This document shows, piece after piece, positions 1 to 9,732 of a DNA stretch of 22,369 nucleotides; position 1 is the first letter of the stretch, and each line of letters starts with the position of its first letter. Under the pieces are notes generated by a model. The model was not told where the DNA came from. It did not search any database and saw nothing but the letters and a program-made list of their open reading frames with translations. The position numbers were made by a program, and so were the translations under genes. Source of the DNA: Oopsacas minuta (Eukaryota > Animalia > Porifera); NCBI GenBank assembly GCA_024704765.1, contig JAKMXF010000049.1, positions 13,882 to 36,250 on the forward strand, read 5' to 3'.

Positions 1-1484
1 TATCATGCCAGCTCTGTACTTTCTGAGTGCCCTCCAGCCTTCTTGACGGAGCTTTTCAGTATTTCGCGCTTTCCTACAGTACTCATCGCCCGCATAGAAG
101 TATTAAACTGGAGTCTTACCGTACGTGTCTACTCGGTCCAGGCAGTCAGCATGAAATGGATCCAGTTTACAATGGCTGCAACTCACAGTGCAGTTGCCAT
201 CATCTATTACACAGACTGGACAGAGAGGATAGTCAGTGAAGTAGGTGTCAGATGCGTAGGGAATAGGAAATGACGGTGGTAGAGGTGGGTGGGATGGATC
301 AGAGGGTATCGGCTCGGGCTGGCAAGAGGTAATGTTAATATAAAGTGTAGCTTGTGTTCCGATCAGCGAGGGTACAGGAAAGTTGTAGGAATCGTCATCA
401 GGATCGTAGGCAAACACAGATGAAGTTGGTCTTAGGGTCGTCAGGAGATCGTTCGTATTAGTGTCGTCCGCTGGCGTGTCCCCCTGCTCCTGAGAGGGAG
501 CGAAAGATGGGTAGGTACTGAAATCGTGGGAAGAGCAAAGCTGCGGTAGAGCAGTATCAGTGAGTGTGGCGCTCGCTGCAATATCTATTTCATCAGTAGG
601 TTCCTGTAGGGAAAGAGAGGTTAACAACATAAGTGTATGCGGAGTATGAGCATACTCGGTAACCTGTCTGGTAGCTAGCGCCTGTTCCAGTTGGTCCTCA
701 TCATCAAGGGTGTTAAGTACCTCGCTTGGCAGTAGCATATCCACACTGAGGTCAGGTGGCGTTCTCCCAATGTGTCCAAAGAGTGTTGCCTTAATACCCG
801 AGTGGTATGCGTTATTCTTGCTATACTGAACAAATTGTAACTCACTTCACCACTCATTGGTCTCTTTACCCGTATCCATGAGACGGGCGAATAATTGCTT
901 CTTGAAATCACCATCAGATCGCTCCACACATCCTTGGTCCTGTGAGTGTTTTAGCCTCCCTGCACCAGGTGTGTACTTGTCCAGAGTCTGCGCACGGCAG
1001 TGAATAGATGCTTGTTAACGAACCCTCTCCCATTATCCGTGTACAAGATGTGTGGGGGGGGGCCATCCTCACAGAAGATCTGCACCAGATGTTCAGCCAC
1101 CTCGACCGCTCGCTTGGATTTGAGAGGCCTCAGGATGGCGAACTTGCTGAAGCAGTCCTGATAGTTGAGGATGTACTGATAGTCTTTGTCTGGGCATATC
1201 TGCATACCCACAAGGTCAGCCTGCCCATGCAGCCCAACATTCTCGGCCATGATAGGTCTGTGGATGACTTTCAGTGTAGATTTCCTATCCTTGTTAATAG
1301 GAAAATGGCACAAAGGCGTACGAAGAGGACAATGAAATACTCGTATATCTTGTCTCGTCCCCCATGACTAAGCTCTTGATGTGCGACCACTAACCTATTC
1401 CACAGGCCTTCCTCAGCCACTACGCGTAACTTTCTCCGTGTAGTCCCCCGGAACTCACCCCCTTTCACGCATAGGACCTTTACA
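1..1484 (-). pseudogene. Degenerate rve/DDE integrase of Ginger2/TDD (KRBA2/SCAND3-like) type, with an acidic/Pro-rich linker and a Cys/His finger downstream; truncated by the gap at 1485 and the window edge
   Basis: Stitched minus-strand frames give AHQELSHGGRDK (Zn-binding region), GQADLVGM (D), YQDCFSKF, ILYTDNGRGF (D) and, after a 1-nt deletion near 960, GRLKHSQDQGCVERS (E). There is an in-frame TGA near 847. The 103-744 ORF carries CPVC..CSHC..FHADC, and the frame continues past the TAA at 103-105. Confidence 0.85.
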
Positions 1485-3269: not shown

Positions 3270-3958
3270 TGATCACGGATAAATTATCTATGAGAAAATA
3301 AAGATGTATGATTGAAAACATAAGTAGACGTATATACACACGTATATATGTTTAATTTTGTGCAGTAATTTCCAAGAAGTATTAGGATTAGACTGGTAAT
3401 CAATTACATAGTTACAGATATCACTTTAGGAATTTCCATAGCAACGATTACAAACAATGAAATGCGACCAAAAAATCAAAGTTGCGCATTGTTTCGGGGC
3501 CTGTCATCTTCATATAACATAGCATAAATTGTAAACAACAACCGGTATTATTTTCGCTTGGACGTTCCTTCACTTTTTTCAGACACTTTCAAAATTTTAT
3601 GCATGGAATAATGGGATTCATTTTTTACCCTGGGTACAACAATCCTTCACATGAAAAGTACACAGTTTAGAATATATCTGATACAAAATTTGAAATCAGC
3701 ATGCAAAATTGTCTAGAATAGATGAAACAATAGATCGCTAATATATTCTATAAAGAACCAGAATCAATGTGCAAATCTTTTATATTTTGAATTTTCCGAA
3801 ACGATAATTTCAGGATCAAAAACCACAAAGTTTCGATTCAAATTTACATAACTAATAGGCTCCCAAATGATTCGAAAATTGGAATGGGTGCTACTTGAAT
3901 GTTTAGAAACACAATGAAAGCATGAAGGAATGAAAGCATTACTAGAAAAAATTTCTTA

Positions 3959-3982
3959 ATTCTTTACTACTAAGCCACTGTG
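3959..3982 (-). repeat. 5' terminal inverted repeat of Transib copy A: heptamer + 8-bp spacer + 9-mer
   Basis: Minus strand reads CACAGTG gcttagta GTAAAGAAT. Confidence 0.8.
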
Positions 3983-4437
3983 TGGAAGACGATCTACGTT
4001 GTACGCTGTTAAAACTACACCTTCGATTAACAATCTGGTCAGGAAAAACAGTGCCAAGTATCACACTAGCTGACTAATATATTCAAAGCGATTAAGTATT
4101 GCACATATTATACATTCTCTTTGCGTAGTTAGTATATCGTATTGTAGGCATTATCATGACCATAGTGTGTTGTTAAAAATAAAATTTTCATACCTAGTTC
4201 AATATTTTTGGGATGCTTAGAAATACAAGGGGAAATTCTTGATTGGTACCCCGAAAGAACAAATGGTTCAAATAAGGTTAAGAGCCACTGATATAGAGTT
4301 ACCTCAAGCAACATTGCTTAGGGTTAATTGACTGGACAGCCAAGATTCCAAACCAAGAATTAAAACACCCTGTAAAATGAATGATCATTTCTACAAAGAC
4401 TCTCTATATATATATAAGTACAAGTTAAGAACGTTTC

Positions 4438-7400
4438 TCAAATAGTTGAATATTGCTTCAAGAATATCTCTACACAATCAGAAAGTTCTTCACCAAAACA
4501 CATCCAAACTTGCACCAGATCGTATTTAGAGATGATATATATGCTTCCAACTAAACTTTTATAGATGTCAGATAGTACCTTCTGAGATTCATGCACTGTA
4601 TCTTCAATAAATATCTTACCAGAAATGCATTGTGAAACCAGAGACAATTGCTTTTGAAAGAATGCCTGCTCATTAATATTTTTAACGAAATGAATGAATA
4701 CGTCAATACCTGTATGTAACTGTGGATTAGTTAGTAATATTTCTTTATGGAATTCATGTTTAATACATATTCTTGCGAGGTTAATATTCAGGAGTACGCA
4801 AGTTTTTATGATATGTAGGTCTTTAGGCAGGTAATAATCAGGTGCATGAGTCATTAAGTAAGAAGCAATCAAATAATTTACTATTGCATCGCCTAGGAAC
4901 ATTAGTCTGTGATAACTTGGTGTAAATGAGTTCATAATATATGAATCATGAGTCAGTGCTTGTACAAGAGTATAAATATCTTTCTGACTCATTTCATAGA
5001 AATAGTTGAGTTTTTCCACAGCGAATAATATATGAGTGTTATGAAAATATTTTAAATAGTTCTTATAGGTTTCCAAACTCCAGTAATTTGGCCGATAATA
5101 CTTCGAATAAATATAGTTAATACAATGTTTTCCCTGTAGATAAAAATAAAATGGGTTTTCTTTAAAGTGATCTGGATCATATACATAGTTAGTAGAAATA
5201 TTCTCAATTAATTCTGGCTCAATCTCTCGGATTACAGACAAAGAATCGAATCGGTAGAGGAACACTATAAGGCTAGATAAGCCACTATTAGAGATAATTA
5301 CAGCTAATAAAGCTTCAAAAGAATCTGCAATAGACTTGTCACTTAGTTCTTGATGTGTGTAAATAGAGGGTGAGAGGGTTTTTATAGGGCTATCAAACGT
5401 AGAAAAGTCAATATCACAGGCACGAGTGTCTTTGCTAACAGTATCATTTAATTGCATGGTCTCTTTAATATTTGTGACAATAAATCCAGGAGGATACCAG
5501 TTAGTTCTAGGATTAAACTCTCGACCAGATATATATTGAGGGAGGTGTATCTCTTGTTCAAGAGAAAGTTTGAAAAGGAGACTATTTTTTACACGATTAG
5601 ATAAAATGCATGATAATACGCCTTGATTTTCATTTGGAAACATCAAAAATAAATGATTCACAACTATAAAGCCTAAACAAACATCGCCGAAGAATTCCTG
5701 TCTCTCCAAGTTAAATCCCTCCTCAGTCCTTTTCAAAGTTAATGCAGTAAGACACGATAATATGGGAAGCTTTAGTTTCAATTTATCGCATAATTCTTGT
5801 GTGAGTAGAAATGCTTCAATTCTACGACATACCGAAGGTATAGCTTGATACTCGGGTGTTAGTGTCCCAAGGAGAGGAACTGGCGATAAGAGCTCTGGAA
5901 AAGAAAGAGATTCCTGGTTTTGCTTATCCATTTTCGTTTGTAATCCTAAATTTGATTCATATCTTTTCAATCTATTCAGTATTATGTTGGGGAAAGGTTC
6001 CAGTATTAATGAAACTTGGTTGGTGTTTGTTAGCTGTACATGGTGGAATTTCTTGAAATATTCTGTATAACTAGATGCATTAGATTTATCTGGTGGCAGA
6101 GAGTCTATATGTATCAGTGGATCTGAATCAATTACGTGGAAATAATTTGTCTTATCAGTAAAGCTGTTTGAAGTGTAATTTTTCTTAACAATCATCCCTA
6201 TATAATAATTAGCATCTTGATTTTCCCTGAATCTTTCAGTCAAAAAAGGCCAGTTTTTCAAAGTTTTCAGTATCTTAAAATCAATACTTGTGGTGTAGGA
6301 ACATATGCCAGATCTGTTTACACAATTAATTTGCGTCGGCACGATTAAATATCTTTTATCCGACTGACTGTAGTCATATTCAACCGAACCCTTATTCCCC
6401 AGGGTAAATCGAAACATTGTAGAGTTAAAAAGGTGCACATCTTGGAGTTCAGATTCTGATAAAGTAACCGTGAGTGGTTCTAGGAACTCAACTGTTGATT
6501 TGACATAGTTTATTCGTTTGTTATTGTTATTCAATACTATACTTGGGAACTTGTGAAGATTGAGCATACTTTCGGAAAGAAGAGCGAACGATTTTATTGA
6601 ACGACTTATGTTAGAATTATGTCCATCTTCTGTTAGATAATAAGATTGCATATATATCTTCTGATTTGATTGAATTGGACTGCCCAAACAATCTGCTACC
6701 TTTATTTGGTATAATTGAATCTCTTGCTCATCTGGATGTCGACTAAAAGACATATAATTTTCGCACTGTTTGATCCATCTTATTTTTGGTGTCATATTTT
6801 CATTCAGTTCTCCCTTTTCATATAATTCTTTACAAACTTCACATGCTGCAAGTCTTTTAGCGCTTAGTTTTGAATTTGACCACATATCAGATAAACTAAT
6901 ATAATTTACCATAAATGAGGATTTAGGTAACAATATATCGTATTTATATTCAAAATGCAGATCACCAGTGAAATAACTGACCTCCTTTCTAGATTCACAT
7001 TTGTAAATTGGTTTATAGTTGGTGTACAAATCAGAATCTCTCGCACCAACTAGAAACTGACAATACCTTTCTAATATAGGTATTGCATTTAACGTGGTGA
7101 GGGGTCCACATAAATTGTTCCTGTACATATCTGTATCACAATTATCTGAATCTATATGCAAGTCTATTGGTATAAAGTCACTTAAAATTATTTCTCTATA
7201 AAGAATTCCAAATTTCACATACGATTGTATTTCAGATGAGACTTTGTGTTGTTCATCTTGTTTAGATAAACATAAATATATGCCACCGTTATCTCTAATT
7301 ATGCTTTGAGATAGAGTGAAGAATGCGAAATCCGTTATTCGATTGAACACTATAACTGCATCGCAGATAGGTAGATCGACGGTATTTAACAGATCGTCAT

Positions 7401-8994
7401 CTGTGATGAGAAGATTAAGTTCTTTAACTCGAAACTTTTCAATTATGGTGTAATAATCGCCTTGTGTAGAGTGATAGAGAGAGCAGTAGGAATCGGGGCT
7501 CAAGAGGTGTTCTACCTTGAAGCATTCATAATCACGATATTGATTAGAAAGTACCTTCAAATATTCAGAAATTATGTACGCCGTTGTCTTGTTGTTAATG
7601 ATGATAATTGCATTGAATCGTTTTTCATAGCACCGTAGTTTTAATTCATTAATAAAAATAGAAAATTTTGTAGAAATATCATTCATCGTTGGTTCTTTGA
7701 TTTTCAGAATTTGATATGTGTAATATTGAAGAATTGACGTCAGGTTTATAATAGCTGATACAATAATTTGGTTTTGGAAATCTGTGTAAACATGCTTTAA
7801 CATTTGTAAATAATTCATGCATATAGTAAAACTACCCCAATATCCAATTTCTCTTATTATGGAATATATATCTGTTGAAATTGAAATCAACATATCTAAA
7901 TCAAAAATTATTAATCGAGGACTATAAATACTTCCATTGACTTTTTTTGAATTAAGTTCATTTAATAGCTCTTGTCTTATTGAAATTGAATGAGAGTTAA
8001 TTCCTCTCAAAAATGATATATACTCGTTCAATTTCTCTTCTAAATAGAGATGTAATCCACTCGCATCTTCCTTTGAATAAGGTAGGATTAGATATATTGG
8101 CTGTTTCAGGGATCTACTAGATTCTAATAGTTTCTGGCTAGTTATTATTCGTGAATTAAATTGTGATGATAAGTTTAATAAATAGTCTCGTACTATTTTA
8201 CTGTTTGGATTTGAAATGACACCTTTGAACAGGCAAAAGGATAAGCCCAATATTCGTGGGATCACCCTCTTAGGAATATCAATTTTGGCTTGTTTATACA
8301 AATCTATTATTCTATTATTTTCATCAGTATAGTTGTAATAAACATCATCAAATACAATCAAATTAAAGTCTGATATAAATAAGTGAGACTTAAGAAGGTC
8401 GTATAGTACTTGTTGTGTCGTAATAAAAACATGTGCCATCTCCATTACGTTCTCAAACCTCTCTAAGTTCCAACTTAAGACTGATCCTGATATTATCATT
8501 GTTTTTAACATCTTCGGCAAATACTCACACAAGTAATAATGATAATGGCTGAGTAATTTTGGTGTACAAACAACTACTGAGCGACGAAAATTACTTCTAT
8601 CCAAAGGTGAACAACAATCCAATTTATCTTGGAAAAATCGCCCTAAAATTTCTTGACACAAGGCTCTGATTACTAATACTGTGGTAAACATTCGTTTTAC
8701 AAATCTGTCTAGAAATAAGATAGAATTCGATGTTAGAATCTCTTCAACGAGTAAAGTTTGATGATAACTCTGATCAGTAGCTGTATTTTCCACATGTCTA
8801 TGCAATTTCGAAGCTTTAAGATCTATGTTTTGCGGAATAATTTCGTCTAAATTGTTCAGGTTATTCTCGAATTCATCAGGGCTAGATAACCGATCCATTG
8901 ATATCAATCCGCCAGATTTCTCGAATACCTTGATATCTGAATGTATTTCAGCCTCCCAATCTTCTGTGGGTGAAAAACATGGAACATTTTCCAT
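4438..8994 (-). CDS. DICER1: Dicer-family endoribonuclease, 1518 aa, single exon: degenerate DExH helicase, DUF283, platform, PAZ, RNase IIIa (intact), RNase IIIb (catalytically altered), no C-terminal dsRBD
   Basis: Uninterrupted ORF. The first ATG is at 8994 (the ORF track starts at a GTG at 9036; in-frame TGA at 9058-9060). Motifs: DFNLIVFDD, PRILGLS, NAIPILERYC..LP..AKRLAACEVCKELYEKGELNE (DUF283), SYTEYFKKFHHVQLTNTNQ (PAZ), FPEL..AIPSVCRRIE (connector), GFNLERQEFFGD, FNPRTNWYPPG, DKSIADSFEALL (RNase IIIa), QALTHDSY..YHRLMFLGDAI, KVLSDIYKSLVGSIY (RNase IIIb). The symbol marks the family; orthology is not established. Confidence 0.96.
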   Translation of the reverse strand: MENVPCFSPTEDWEAEIHSDIKVFEKSGGLISMDRLSSPDEFENNLNNLDEIIPQNIDLKASKLHRHVENTATDQSYHQTLLVEEILTSNSILFLDRFVKRMFTTVLVIRALCQEILGRFFQDKLDCCSPLDRSNFRRSVVVCTPKLLSHYHYYLCEYLPKMLKTMIISGSVLSWNLERFENVMEMAHVFITTQQVLYDLLKSHLFISDFNLIVFDDVYYNYTDENNRIIDLYKQAKIDIPKRVIPRILGLSFCLFKGVISNPNSKIVRDYLLNLSSQFNSRIITSQKLLESSRSLKQPIYLILPYSKEDASGLHLYLEEKLNEYISFLRGINSHSISIRQELLNELNSKKVNGSIYSPRLIIFDLDMLISISTDIYSIIREIGYWGSFTICMNYLQMLKHVYTDFQNQIIVSAIINLTSILQYYTYQILKIKEPTMNDISTKFSIFINELKLRCYEKRFNAIIIINNKTTAYIISEYLKVLSNQYRDYECFKVEHLLSPDSYCSLYHSTQGDYYTIIEKFRVKELNLLITDDDLLNTVDLPICDAVIVFNRITDFAFFTLSQSIIRDNGGIYLCLSKQDEQHKVSSEIQSYVKFGILYREIILSDFIPIDLHIDSDNCDTDMYRNNLCGPLTTLNAIPILERYCQFLVGARDSDLYTNYKPIYKCESRKEVSYFTGDLHFEYKYDILLPKSSFMVNYISLSDMWSNSKLSAKRLAACEVCKELYEKGELNENMTPKIRWIKQCENYMSFSRHPDEQEIQLYQIKVADCLGSPIQSNQKIYMQSYYLTEDGHNSNISRSIKSFALLSESMLNLHKFPSIVLNNNNKRINYVKSTVEFLEPLTVTLSESELQDVHLFNSTMFRFTLGNKGSVEYDYSQSDKRYLIVPTQINCVNRSGICSYTTSIDFKILKTLKNWPFLTERFRENQDANYYIGMIVKKNYTSNSFTDKTNYFHVIDSDPLIHIDSLPPDKSNASSYTEYFKKFHHVQLTNTNQVSLILEPFPNIILNRLKRYESNLGLQTKMDKQNQESLSFPELLSPVPLLGTLTPEYQAIPSVCRRIEAFLLTQELCDKLKLKLPILSCLTALTLKRTEEGFNLERQEFFGDVCLGFIVVNHLFLMFPNENQGVLSCILSNRVKNSLLFKLSLEQEIHLPQYISGREFNPRTNWYPPGFIVTNIKETMQLNDTVSKDTRACDIDFSTFDSPIKTLSPSIYTHQELSDKSIADSFEALLAVIISNSGLSSLIVFLYRFDSLSVIREIEPELIENISTNYVYDPDHFKENPFYFYLQGKHCINYIYSKYYRPNYWSLETYKNYLKYFHNTHILFAVEKLNYFYEMSQKDIYTLVQALTHDSYIMNSFTPSYHRLMFLGDAIVNYLIASYLMTHAPDYYLPKDLHIIKTCVLLNINLARICIKHEFHKEILLTNPQLHTGIDVFIHFVKNINEQAFFQKQLSLVSQCISGKIFIEDTVHESQKVLSDIYKSLVGSIYIISKYDLVQVWMCFGEELSDCVEIFLKQYSTI

Positions 8995-9150
8995 TACTTT
9001 AACTGCTCGGACAATTTGTTCTATAAATACTAACACCGTTATGAGAACTTGCTTTATTCAGTAATAACATTAAAGTTATCAAGGGTGTGAATATTGACAA
9101 AATTGTGCCATCAATGGTTACAAAGTAGAAATAATTGGTCTAAGACCACT

Positions 9151-9267
9151 TATGGCCGGCCATATCTGATTTCAGGGCCAGGTAAAACGTTACAGGACAT
9201 CGATATAAAATTTTGGTTGTAGAGTTAATTAATTCTATTAATTCTGCAGCGAAGTGTCCGCCATTCA
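9151..9267 (-). promoter_or_regulatory. Possible Dicer proximal promoter/5' UTR elements
   Basis: Perfect 14-bp palindrome TATGGCCGGCCATA at 9151-9164 and a YY1-like AATGGCGG on the sense (minus) strand near 9258-9266, 160-270 bp upstream of the ATG. Supported only by position and motif resemblance. Confidence 0.2.
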
Positions 9268-9555
9268 TATGTATTCAGTCGAAACCGGTTTCTTACTACC
9301 TCTCTGATCTGCAGGAAAACTTAGCAAGAATTAATTGATGGAAATGTATATAATTCCTACATTATTTACAATCTGAGGATGAAAAAATAGTAACAAAAAT
9401 CACAAATCACCGTCTGTGCCGAAGTAATTTTCCCTTAGGCAACAGGATTCAAAGTTTTGGTATACCACATGTTTGTTGAGAGAAAGTCTCTACCTATATT
9501 TAAAAATTTGAAAAATTTGTTTACTTATATTCTTAAATCAACAATATATAAATAA

Positions 9556-9732
9556 ATGGGAAACTTGAAAATGTGAAATTCGGATTCAGTGCTCTCAAAT
9601 ATCCATGTATAGCCGTTAAGAGCAAGTCCCTAAGTATATTTTGATATTTCAATTATTTGTTCATTGTATATTTATAAAATAGTAATAAATTTACTCATGA
9701 GAAACTTGAAAATACGAAATTCGGAATCAGCG
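9556..9732 (+). repeat. Two diverged 36-bp direct repeats 141 bp apart
   Basis: ATGGGAAACTTGAAAATGTGAAATTCGGATTCAGTG (9556-9591) and ATGAGAAACTTGAAAATACGAAATTCGGAATCAGCG (9697-9732). Confidence 0.7.

What the first reader, a model, noticed from the sequence alone, without database searches (positions are those of the whole stretch)
4438..5720. Half-active Dicer: RNase IIIa intact, RNase IIIb with both catalytic glutamates replaced
Seen: RNase IIIa keeps E (5695-5697), D (5683-5685), D (5323-5325) and E (5314-5316). RNase IIIb reads YHRL-M-FLGD (ATG at 4900-4902) and KVL-S-DIY-K-S (AAA at 4558-4560), versus human YQRL-E-FLGD and KAM-G-DIF-E-S. Established: these positions match human DICER1 E1705, G1809 and E1813, metal-binding-site tumour hotspots where substitution abolishes 5p-arm cleavage and leaves 3p cleavage. 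The E-to-M change needs two base changes, and the 1518-codon frame is intact while every neighbouring ORF has decayed, which argues against sequencing error or a dead gene. Inference: a naturally evolved single-strand-nicking Dicer or a regulatory/scaffolding paralog, implying a non-canonical small-RNA pathway.
Basis: partly seen in the sequence, partly recalled or inferred. Interest (0 to 1): 0.88.

Follow-up and report, generated by a model that had tools for sequence, protein, structure and literature searches.

The report
Glass-sponge Dicer with one dead blade
Glass sponges keep, under strong purifying selection, an extra Dicer gene whose second cutting site and ATP motor have lost their key residues while the first cutting site is intact, so it most likely cuts only one strand of double-stranded RNA, as cancer-mutant human DICER1 does.

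Summary
The minus-strand ORF 4438-8994 (1518 aa from the first ATG) encodes a full-length Dicer of the glass sponge Oopsacas minuta (contig JAKMXF010000049).

- **Catalytic sites.** RNase IIIa keeps E/D/D/E. RNase IIIb reads M/D/D/K at the positions of human E1705/D1709/D1810/E1813.
- **Not an error or a dead gene.** Read-derived contigs agree at both codons. Seven relatives from seven other assemblies (37-57% identical overall) all carry M (or N) and K there.
- **Selection.** dN/dS is 0.15-0.18 for the whole gene. RNase IIIb has the lowest values of any domain (0.09-0.10), lower than in the canonical sister paralog (0.18-0.22).
- **Rarity.** Of 260 Dicer-family proteins with a fully aligned IIIb tetrad, 249 have EDDE. 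The 11 exceptions are all this family.
The helicase ATPase motifs I, II and VI are also destroyed. The helicase, platform-PAZ and RNase III folds are retained in AlphaFold models.
- **Origin.** The family is monophyletic and sister to an intronless canonical Dicer with which it coexists in at least three species.

The best reading is an ATP-independent, end-measuring Dicer that cuts only the 3' arm, using IIIa. Expression and activity are untested, and I found no description of this in the literature. It is a new variant of a known kind.

The parts
4438..8994 (-). Complete intronless CDS, 1518 codons plus stop, of the Dicer paralog (P0001)
   Evidence: ORF list and translation. Pfam Dicer_dimer plus 2x Ribonuclease_3. 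Same gene called on GCA_024704765.1 JAKMXF010000049.1.
8770..8994 (-). N-terminal extension (residues 1-75), predicted disordered, with a family-specific acidic-Trp motif (EDW, residues 10-17, 8944-8967)
   Evidence: pLDDT below 50 for residues 1-75. Motif conserved in all 8 family members and absent from the canonical paralogs.
7165..8769 (-). Dicer/RIG-I-type helicase fold (residues about 76-610) with destroyed ATPase motifs: motif I remnant 8683-8712, motif II remnant (DDVY in place of DEAH) 8335-8352, motif VI remnant 7291-7314
   Evidence: Alignment with canonical paralogs that keep GTGKT, DEAH and QSRGRAR. AF2 model matches Dicer helicase structures 9mx5, 7w0a, 7zpk at E 1e-25 to 1e-29. 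No Pfam helicase hit.
6784..7086 (-). Dicer dimerisation domain (DUF283), residues 637-737
   Evidence: Pfam PF03368, E 4e-14. dN/dS 0.08-0.12 in group A.
5875..6783 (-). Platform-PAZ-connector cassette, residues 738-1040
   Evidence: Contiguous alignment with canonical paralogs that have a PAZ hit. Sub-threshold PAZ hits in P0002 and P0008. The model aligns to whole Dicers over about 900 columns and to the human platform-PAZ-connector structure 4ngb.
5245..5742 (-). RNase IIIa with the intact catalytic tetrad E1100, D1104, D1224, E1227
   Evidence: EDDE in 8 of 8 family members and in every other aligned Dicer.
4468..4974 (-). RNase IIIb pseudo-catalytic domain: M1365 (4900-4902), D1369, S1475, D1476, K1479 (4558-4560)
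   Evidence: The tetrad is MDDK, MEDK or NDDK only in this family, out of 260 proteins. Lowest dN/dS of all domains.

Best explanation
This is a functional, selected Dicer paralog confined, as far as found, to glass sponges (Hexactinellida). It arose by duplication of an intronless canonical Dicer. It then lost the two metal-binding glutamates of RNase IIIb and the ATPase motifs of the helicase, while keeping every fold and the complete RNase IIIa active site.

Proposed mechanism (inferred, not shown):
- The platform-PAZ cassette anchors an RNA duplex end, with no ATP-driven threading.
- The IIIa/IIIb pair clamps the helix about two turns away.
- Only IIIa cuts. In characterised Dicers IIIa cleaves the 3' arm, the strand whose 3' end sits in PAZ.
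- IIIb acts as a non-cutting structural and RNA-holding half.
- The product would be a nicked duplex or hairpin that yields a 3p-type small RNA and leaves the 5' strand uncut. That is the behaviour of human DICER1 IIIb hotspot mutants and of enzyme-pseudoenzyme RNase III pairs.

Shown here: the substitutions, their conservation, purifying selection, fold retention and the single origin. Inferred: IIIa activity, the single-strand cut, and the pathway.
For: Both codons are real. The substitutions are fixed in 8 species-level sequences from 8 assemblies, 37-57% identical overall.

Whole-gene dN/dS (Nei-Gojobori 1986) is 0.15-0.18 at unsaturated dS of 0.55-0.93, equal to the canonical paralog in the same three assemblies (0.15-0.17). 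IIIb has the lowest dN/dS of the domains (0.09-0.10 in group A, 0.16-0.22 in group B), against 0.18-0.22 for canonical IIIb.

The IIIa tetrad EDDE is invariant in 8 of 8 members, although only 35% of IIIa columns are invariant within the family.

The glutamate replaced by K is the one that bridges both Mg ions and is functionally essential in bacterial RNase III (E110 in Aquifex, E117 in E. coli; PMC3867540). E1705 and E1813 are DICER1 hotspot sites, and hotspot mutation (shown directly for D1709N) removes 5p miRNAs while 3p miRNAs persist (PMC4674484).

The helicase, DUF283, platform-PAZ and RNase III folds are retained in the models. The family is monophyletic at 100/99 support and forms a 100/100-supported clade with the canonical intronless Dicers. 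Both paralogs occur in three assemblies.
Against: No transcript, small-RNA or protein evidence: the runs found look like DNA (even depth, contigs that break at repeats).

IIIa activity is inferred from conservation only. One residue that is K in 100% of other Dicers' IIIa (position 1108) is lost in 7 of 8 members, with unknown effect.

IIIb differs from other Dicers at many more conserved positions (D1373, G1391, T1394, D1395, R1397, P1471, D1488), so its RNA grip may also differ.

Confidence: 0.5

Rival explanations
1. A fully non-catalytic Dicer: a dsRNA- or small-RNA-binding scaffold, for example an Argonaute-loading factor, an end sensor, or a decoy that regulates the canonical Dicers. Neither RNase III site would be used.
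For: Two of three enzymatic modules are already dead. IIIb, the dead domain, has the lowest dN/dS, as expected if binding rather than cutting is selected. Loss of the otherwise universal IIIa K1108. A conserved N-terminal acidic-Trp motif could be a partner-docking site. Noncatalytic RNase III proteins exist (PMC3867540).
Against: All four IIIa metal ligands are invariant across 8 members, while the equivalent IIIb positions were free to change. A pure scaffold has no obvious need for an intact metal site.
Confidence: 0.3
2. The intact single RNase III site works on a different substrate, nicking DNA or RNA-DNA hybrids. From my own knowledge, caspase-truncated C. elegans DCR-1, which keeps one intact RNase III domain, was reported to do this.
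For: Only the general architecture (one live and one dead RNase III domain) and the transposon-rich setting. No direct evidence.
Against: PAZ, platform and the helicase clamp, all dsRNA-handling parts, are retained and under constraint. No nuclear or DNA-binding feature was found.
Confidence: 0.07
3. IIIb is still active through unconventional chemistry or relocated acidic residues, so the enzyme dices normally.
For: D1369 (E in three members) and D1476 are retained. A few acidic residues are family-typical in IIIb, at 1417, 1442, 1492 and 1503.
Against: The Mg-bridging glutamate is replaced by lysine in 8 of 8 members, and the other glutamate by M or N. The bridging glutamate is described as functionally essential (PMC3867540), and hotspot changes in this cleft lost IIIb cleavage in human DICER1 (PMC4674484). 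None of the gained acidic positions is adjacent in sequence to the site, and D1350 and D1392 are shared with the EDDE paralogs.
Confidence: 0.05
4. Pseudogene, retrocopy in decay, or assembly or sequencing error.
For: Intronless and surrounded by repeats. No expression evidence.
Against: An intact 1518-codon frame (chance about 1e-52). Intact frames in seven other assemblies. dN/dS of 0.15-0.35. Reads agree. Single-exon genes are reported as numerous in the related glass-sponge genome of Aphrocallistes vastus (PMC10282587), and the canonical sister paralog is intronless too.
Confidence: 0.02

Closest known systems
Human DICER1 RNase IIIb hotspot mutants (E1705, D1709, D1810, E1813)
   Same: The same two glutamate positions are hit. 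These mutants lose IIIb cleavage and 5p miRNAs while 3p miRNAs persist (PMC4674484).
   Different: Those are somatic tumour mutations in an otherwise normal miRNA Dicer. Here the changes are germline, fixed, conserved across species under purifying selection, sit in a separate paralog, and come with a dead helicase ATPase and other IIIb changes.
Trypanosome editosome RNase III pairs (catalytic KREN1-3 with degenerate KREPB4-8)
   Same: One catalytic and one degenerate RNase III domain are proposed to form a dimer that cuts one strand and spares the other (PMC5648035; PMC3867540).
   Different: There the pair is made in trans between separate small proteins with zinc-finger and PUF motifs, inside a mitochondrial complex. 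Here the pair is in cis, inside a full Dicer with PAZ and helicase. The two are not related beyond the RNase III domain.
E. coli RNase III heterodimers with one dead subunit
   Same: Artificial heterodimers with one functional subunit nick dsRNA (cited in PMC3867540 and PMC5648035). The glutamate replaced by K here is E117 of the E. coli enzyme, which those reviews call functionally essential. From my own knowledge, E117K (rnc70) binds dsRNA but does not cut it.
   Different: An engineered bacterial class 1 enzyme, not a natural Dicer.
Intronless canonical hexactinellid Dicer (P0009-P0011, P0027, P0028, P0209, P0210)
   Same: Sister clade (100/100 support), similar length (1508-1589 aa), intronless, same domain order, no C-terminal dsRBD, and present in the same assemblies.
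   Different: It keeps EDDE in both RNase III domains and intact helicase motifs I, II and VI. It is 23-28% identical overall.
Drosophila Dcr-1 and mammalian Dicer (ATP-independent helicase)
   Same: From my own knowledge, and PMC10328071 for the mammalian enzyme, the helicase serves as a non-hydrolysing clamp for hairpin substrates. Human and mouse Dicer are the best sequence and structure matches.
   Different: Those enzymes keep both nuclease sites. Here motifs I, II and VI are all replaced, not merely unused.

Membership tests
Dicer (class 3 RNase III) | Two tandem RNase III domains in one chain that form an intramolecular dimer | tested here: met
   Pfam Ribonuclease_3 twice. phmmer to human Dicer IIIa and IIIb at E 5e-39. 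Model aligned to Dicer structures over about 900 columns.
Dicer (class 3 RNase III) | Dicer dimerisation domain (DUF283) between the helicase and PAZ | tested here: met
   PF03368, E 4e-14, above the gathering score.
Dicer (class 3 RNase III) | Platform-PAZ-connector cassette | tested here: met
   Met by fold only: the model matches 4ngb and whole Dicers, and the alignment with PAZ-positive paralogs is contiguous. Pfam PAZ is below threshold or absent. End-binding pocket residues were not assessed.
Dicer (class 3 RNase III) | N-terminal DExD/H (RIG-I-like) helicase with ATPase motifs | tested here: not met
   The fold is present, but motifs I, II and VI are replaced in all 8 members. This feature is not universal among accepted Dicers.
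Dicer (class 3 RNase III) | Catalytic E-D-D-E tetrad in both RNase III domains | tested here: not met
   IIIa is EDDE. IIIb is MDDK. 249 of 260 surveyed Dicer-family proteins have EDDE in IIIb, and the 11 exceptions are this family. By descent it is a Dicer (tree), but not a canonical two-cut enzyme.
Dicer (class 3 RNase III) | Produces about 21-25 nt duplexes with 2-nt 3' overhangs | not testable with these tools
   Needs biochemistry or small-RNA sequencing.
Enzyme-pseudoenzyme RNase III pairs (single-strand cutters) | One RNase III domain with catalytic residues paired with one that lacks them | tested here: met
   IIIa EDDE against IIIb MDDK within one chain, conserved in 8 of 8 members.
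Enzyme-pseudoenzyme RNase III pairs (single-strand cutters) | Cleavage of only one strand of the bound duplex | not testable with these tools
   Inferred from DICER1 hotspot data and the heterodimer literature.

The most novel reading that the evidence does not exclude
Glass sponges have evolved and kept, across the eight sequences found, a natural 'nickase' Dicer. It would be an ATP-independent, end-measuring enzyme that cuts only the 3' arm. That would define a strand-selective small-RNA route, either 3p-only maturation of hairpins or nicks whose 3'-OH primes the helicase-RdRP fusion enzymes that earlier notes of this scan report in the same genome. It would be the first natural counterpart of the DICER1 tumour hotspot state.
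Probability: 0.45. Interest if true: 0.85.

Novelty: new variant of a known kind. Interest (0 to 1): 0.72.

Why it matters
Dicer is treated as an obligate two-cut enzyme. Loss of the IIIb site is known as a cancer-driving defect, not as a natural design. A conserved paralog with exactly that defect, under purifying selection strongest in the 'dead' domain, shows that a one-bladed Dicer can be an adaptive state.

- It offers a natural system for asking what single-strand dicing is good for: strand selection, or priming of RNA-dependent RNA polymerases.
- It offers a natural reference point for thinking about the 3p-biased output of DICER1 mutants.
- It adds a new element to the poorly known RNA-silencing machinery of an early-branching animal lineage.

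The two glass-sponge genome papers I checked do not mention Dicer or RNAi at all.

Tried and rejected
- **RNA evidence.** Two run searches returned only four runs of one sample plus one relative. All are kept as contigs, of unknown kind, with DNA-like even depth. No expression statement is possible.
- **Organism B (run X5).** It holds a copy a few percent different. No difference is listed at the two codons, but 204 differences were not shown, so this is not counted as confirmation.
- **Platform-PAZ by sequence.** Search of residues 620-1060 against PDB found only the DUF283 part, so PAZ rests on the fold model.
- **Compensating acidic residues.** Checked by sequence only.
- **Literature.** Searches for a natural Dicer with an inactive RNase III domain, for Dicer in Hexactinellida or sponges, and in Dicer reviews found nothing. 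The library lacks most subscription journals.
- **Bacterial-type promoter and terminator scan**: irrelevant for an animal gene.
- **Canonical intronless paralog in O. minuta.** Not found. The word-based search also missed known family members, so absence is not shown.
- **Earlier-findings look-ups** by sequence and by words were blank.

Full report
**What is there.** The window's only long ORF lies on the minus strand at 4438-9036. From the first ATG (8994) it encodes 1518 residues. Pfam finds a Dicer dimerisation domain and two RNase III domains, but no helicase or PAZ hit. The exact protein is called on GCA_024704765.1, contig JAKMXF010000049.1. The genome paper gives that accession series to the glass sponge Oopsacas minuta (PMC10280926). 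This checks the 'glass sponge' label in earlier notes of the scan.

**The observation.**
- In ATG numbering, RNase IIIa has E1100, D1104, D1224 and E1227.
- RNase IIIb has M1365 (ATG, 4900-4902), D1369, S1475, D1476 and K1479 (AAA, 4558-4560).
- phmmer against PDB chains aligns both domains to human Dicer (E 5e-39). M1365 falls on E1705, S1475 on G1809 and K1479 on E1813.
- Logan contigs of three runs of one sample cover 4112-9532 with two differences: 7024 (synonymous) and 8071 (K308N). Neither touches the two codons. That sample is probably the assembly's own, so the stronger confirmation comes from relatives.

**Relatives.** The protein search found seven proteins of 1505-1534 aa (P0002-P0008), 47-68% identical over the RNase III region and 37-57% overall.
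- Each comes from a different ENA assembly, and each is a single uninterrupted ORF.
- All have M (N in P0008) at the first glutamate and K at the last. All have S or A at the glycine. Three also have E for D1369.
- All keep EDDE in IIIa.
- A neighbour gene of one relative has Oopsacas minuta proteins as its only named matches, at about 40% identity. That is consistent with these contigs coming from other sponges related to glass sponges.
- None of the family carries a name or an NCBI or UniRef accession in the collection.

**A canonical sister.** A second group (P0009-P0011, P0027, P0028, P0209, P0210) is also intronless and 1508-1589 aa long.
- It has the full Pfam set (DEAD/ResIII, Helicase_C, Dicer_dimer, PAZ, 2x RNase III) and EDDE in both nuclease domains.
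- Three assemblies hold one gene of each kind, so the two are paralogs that coexist.
- In a maximum-likelihood tree of 50 Dicers, the two groups form one clade (100/100 support). The half-dead family is monophyletic (100/99) on a long stem. The loss therefore happened once, after a duplication.
- No member of the canonical group was found from O. minuta. The search method cannot prove absence. Earlier notes report a separate 16-intron Dicer in this genome, which I did not check.

**Selection.** I used Nei-Gojobori estimates on a codon alignment.

| Group | Whole-gene dN/dS | IIIb dN/dS |
|---|---|---|
| Half-dead, group A (P0002-4; dS 0.55-0.93) | 0.15-0.18 | 0.09-0.10 |
| Half-dead, group B (P0005-7) | 0.32-0.35 | 0.16-0.22 |
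| Canonical paralog, same three assemblies as group A | 0.15-0.17 | 0.18-0.22 |

- IIIb has the lowest dN/dS of the family's domains, equalled only by DUF283 in group A.
- In those species pairs the half-dead gene's dN (0.10-0.14) is, if anything, lower than the canonical one's (0.12-0.16).
- This rules out a pseudogene. It also shows that the non-cutting domain is needed.

**Rarity.** An exhaustive phmmer search of 1.84 billion cluster representatives gave 1827 hits. I aligned the best 150, plus the hits of the two word-based searches, to domain HMMs. Of 260 proteins with a complete IIIb tetrad, 249 are EDDE. The 11 others are all this family: the 8 members plus 3 near-copies of P0006. IIIa is EDDE wherever it is fully aligned. 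Only the top of the hit list was surveyed.

**More than two residues.** The helicase ATPase is also gone in all eight members. Motif I (GTGKT in the sister) reads KRM, RKL or similar. Motif II DEAH reads DDVY or similar. Motif VI QSRGRAR has lost its arginines.
- The folds remain. The AlphaFold model of residues 620-1518 (pLDDT 78.7, pTM 0.76) aligns to human, mouse and fly Dicers over about 900 columns and to the human platform-PAZ-connector cassette.
- The model of residues 1-640 (pLDDT 74.4) has a Dicer/RIG-I-type helicase at about 76-610 and a disordered first 75 residues.
- IIIb differs from other Dicers at several further near-universal positions: D1373, G1391, T1394, D1395, R1397, P1471 and D1488.
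- No acidic residue specific to the family appears next to the site in sequence. A 3D check was not possible.

**How it most likely works.** In RNase III, the glutamate equivalent to K1479 coordinates both Mg ions and is functionally essential (PMC3867540). In human DICER1, E1705 and E1813 are among the hotspot sites of the IIIb metal-binding cleft. Hotspot mutants lose IIIb cleavage and 5p miRNAs while 3p miRNAs persist (PMC4674484). So IIIb here is very probably unable to cut.

The four IIIa ligands have stayed invariant over the same time in which the IIIb ones changed. That argues that IIIa still binds metal and cuts. A dead ATPase with a retained clamp and PAZ suggests end-anchored, ATP-independent handling of hairpins or duplex ends, not processive threading.

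The model is therefore a measuring Dicer that nicks the 3' arm only. Precedents for one-live, one-dead RNase III pairs that spare one strand are the trypanosome editosome endonucleases and engineered E. coli heterodimers (PMC5648035; PMC3867540). I put this at about 0.5.

Rivals:
- a purely non-catalytic scaffold or loading factor, about 0.3;
- a different substrate, about 0.07;
- residual IIIb activity, about 0.05;
- an artefact or pseudogene, about 0.02.

**What is missing.** There is no evidence of transcription, of the protein, or of any small-RNA class. All functional statements are inference from sequence, conservation and the behaviour of mutants of other enzymes.

**Novelty.** Searches of the held literature found no natural Dicer with an inactivated RNase III site and no treatment of hexactinellid Dicers. 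The O. minuta and A. vastus genome papers do not contain the words Dicer, RNAi or Argonaute. By descent and architecture it is a Dicer, so this is a new variant of a known kind.

Noticed in passing
window 8944-8967 (residues 10-17), and the same position in P0002-P0008: A conserved acidic-tryptophan motif (EDW followed by acidic residues), then a conserved Ser-Pro-acidic stretch, in the disordered 75-residue N-terminal extension. It is present in all 8 half-dead Dicers and absent from the canonical paralogs. It may be a partner-docking site.
   Followed up: partly
window 5671-5673 (IIIa residue 1108) and 4876-4878 (IIIb residue 1373): At pseudo-symmetric positions four residues after the GD of each signature motif, other Dicers have K (100%) in IIIa and D (98%) in IIIb. 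Seven family members have lost both. P0008 keeps K and has E. This looks like a co-varying pair across the IIIa-IIIb interface.
   Followed up: partly
window 3700-4290 and 9216-9600: Word depth in the read contigs jumps from about 50 over the gene to hundreds and up to about 10,000, with many variant contigs. The single-copy Dicer gene is embedded between high-copy repeats. Earlier notes describe Transib/RAG-like transposon features across this window.
   Followed up: no
window 954-1313 (minus strand): A 120-aa ORF with a retroviral-type integrase core (rve, E 3e-8). This is a transposon remnant in the GC-richer left end of the window.
   Followed up: no
window 7024 and 8071: All three runs of the sample differ from the assembly at these two bases: Y657 synonymous and K308N. 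This is either an allele or a polishing difference.
   Followed up: partly
L001 and L002 (ERZ25072730, two contigs): The identical 1533-aa protein P0002 lies on two contigs of one assembly. The near flanks match and the far flanks differ, so these are haplotigs or a recent segmental duplication.
   Followed up: no
P0009-P0011 and P0001-P0008, IIIa: Both hexactinellid intronless groups have Q where 95% of other Dicers have E (human E1340 by my count, four residues before S1344). This is a clade trait, not linked to the IIIb loss.
   Followed up: partly
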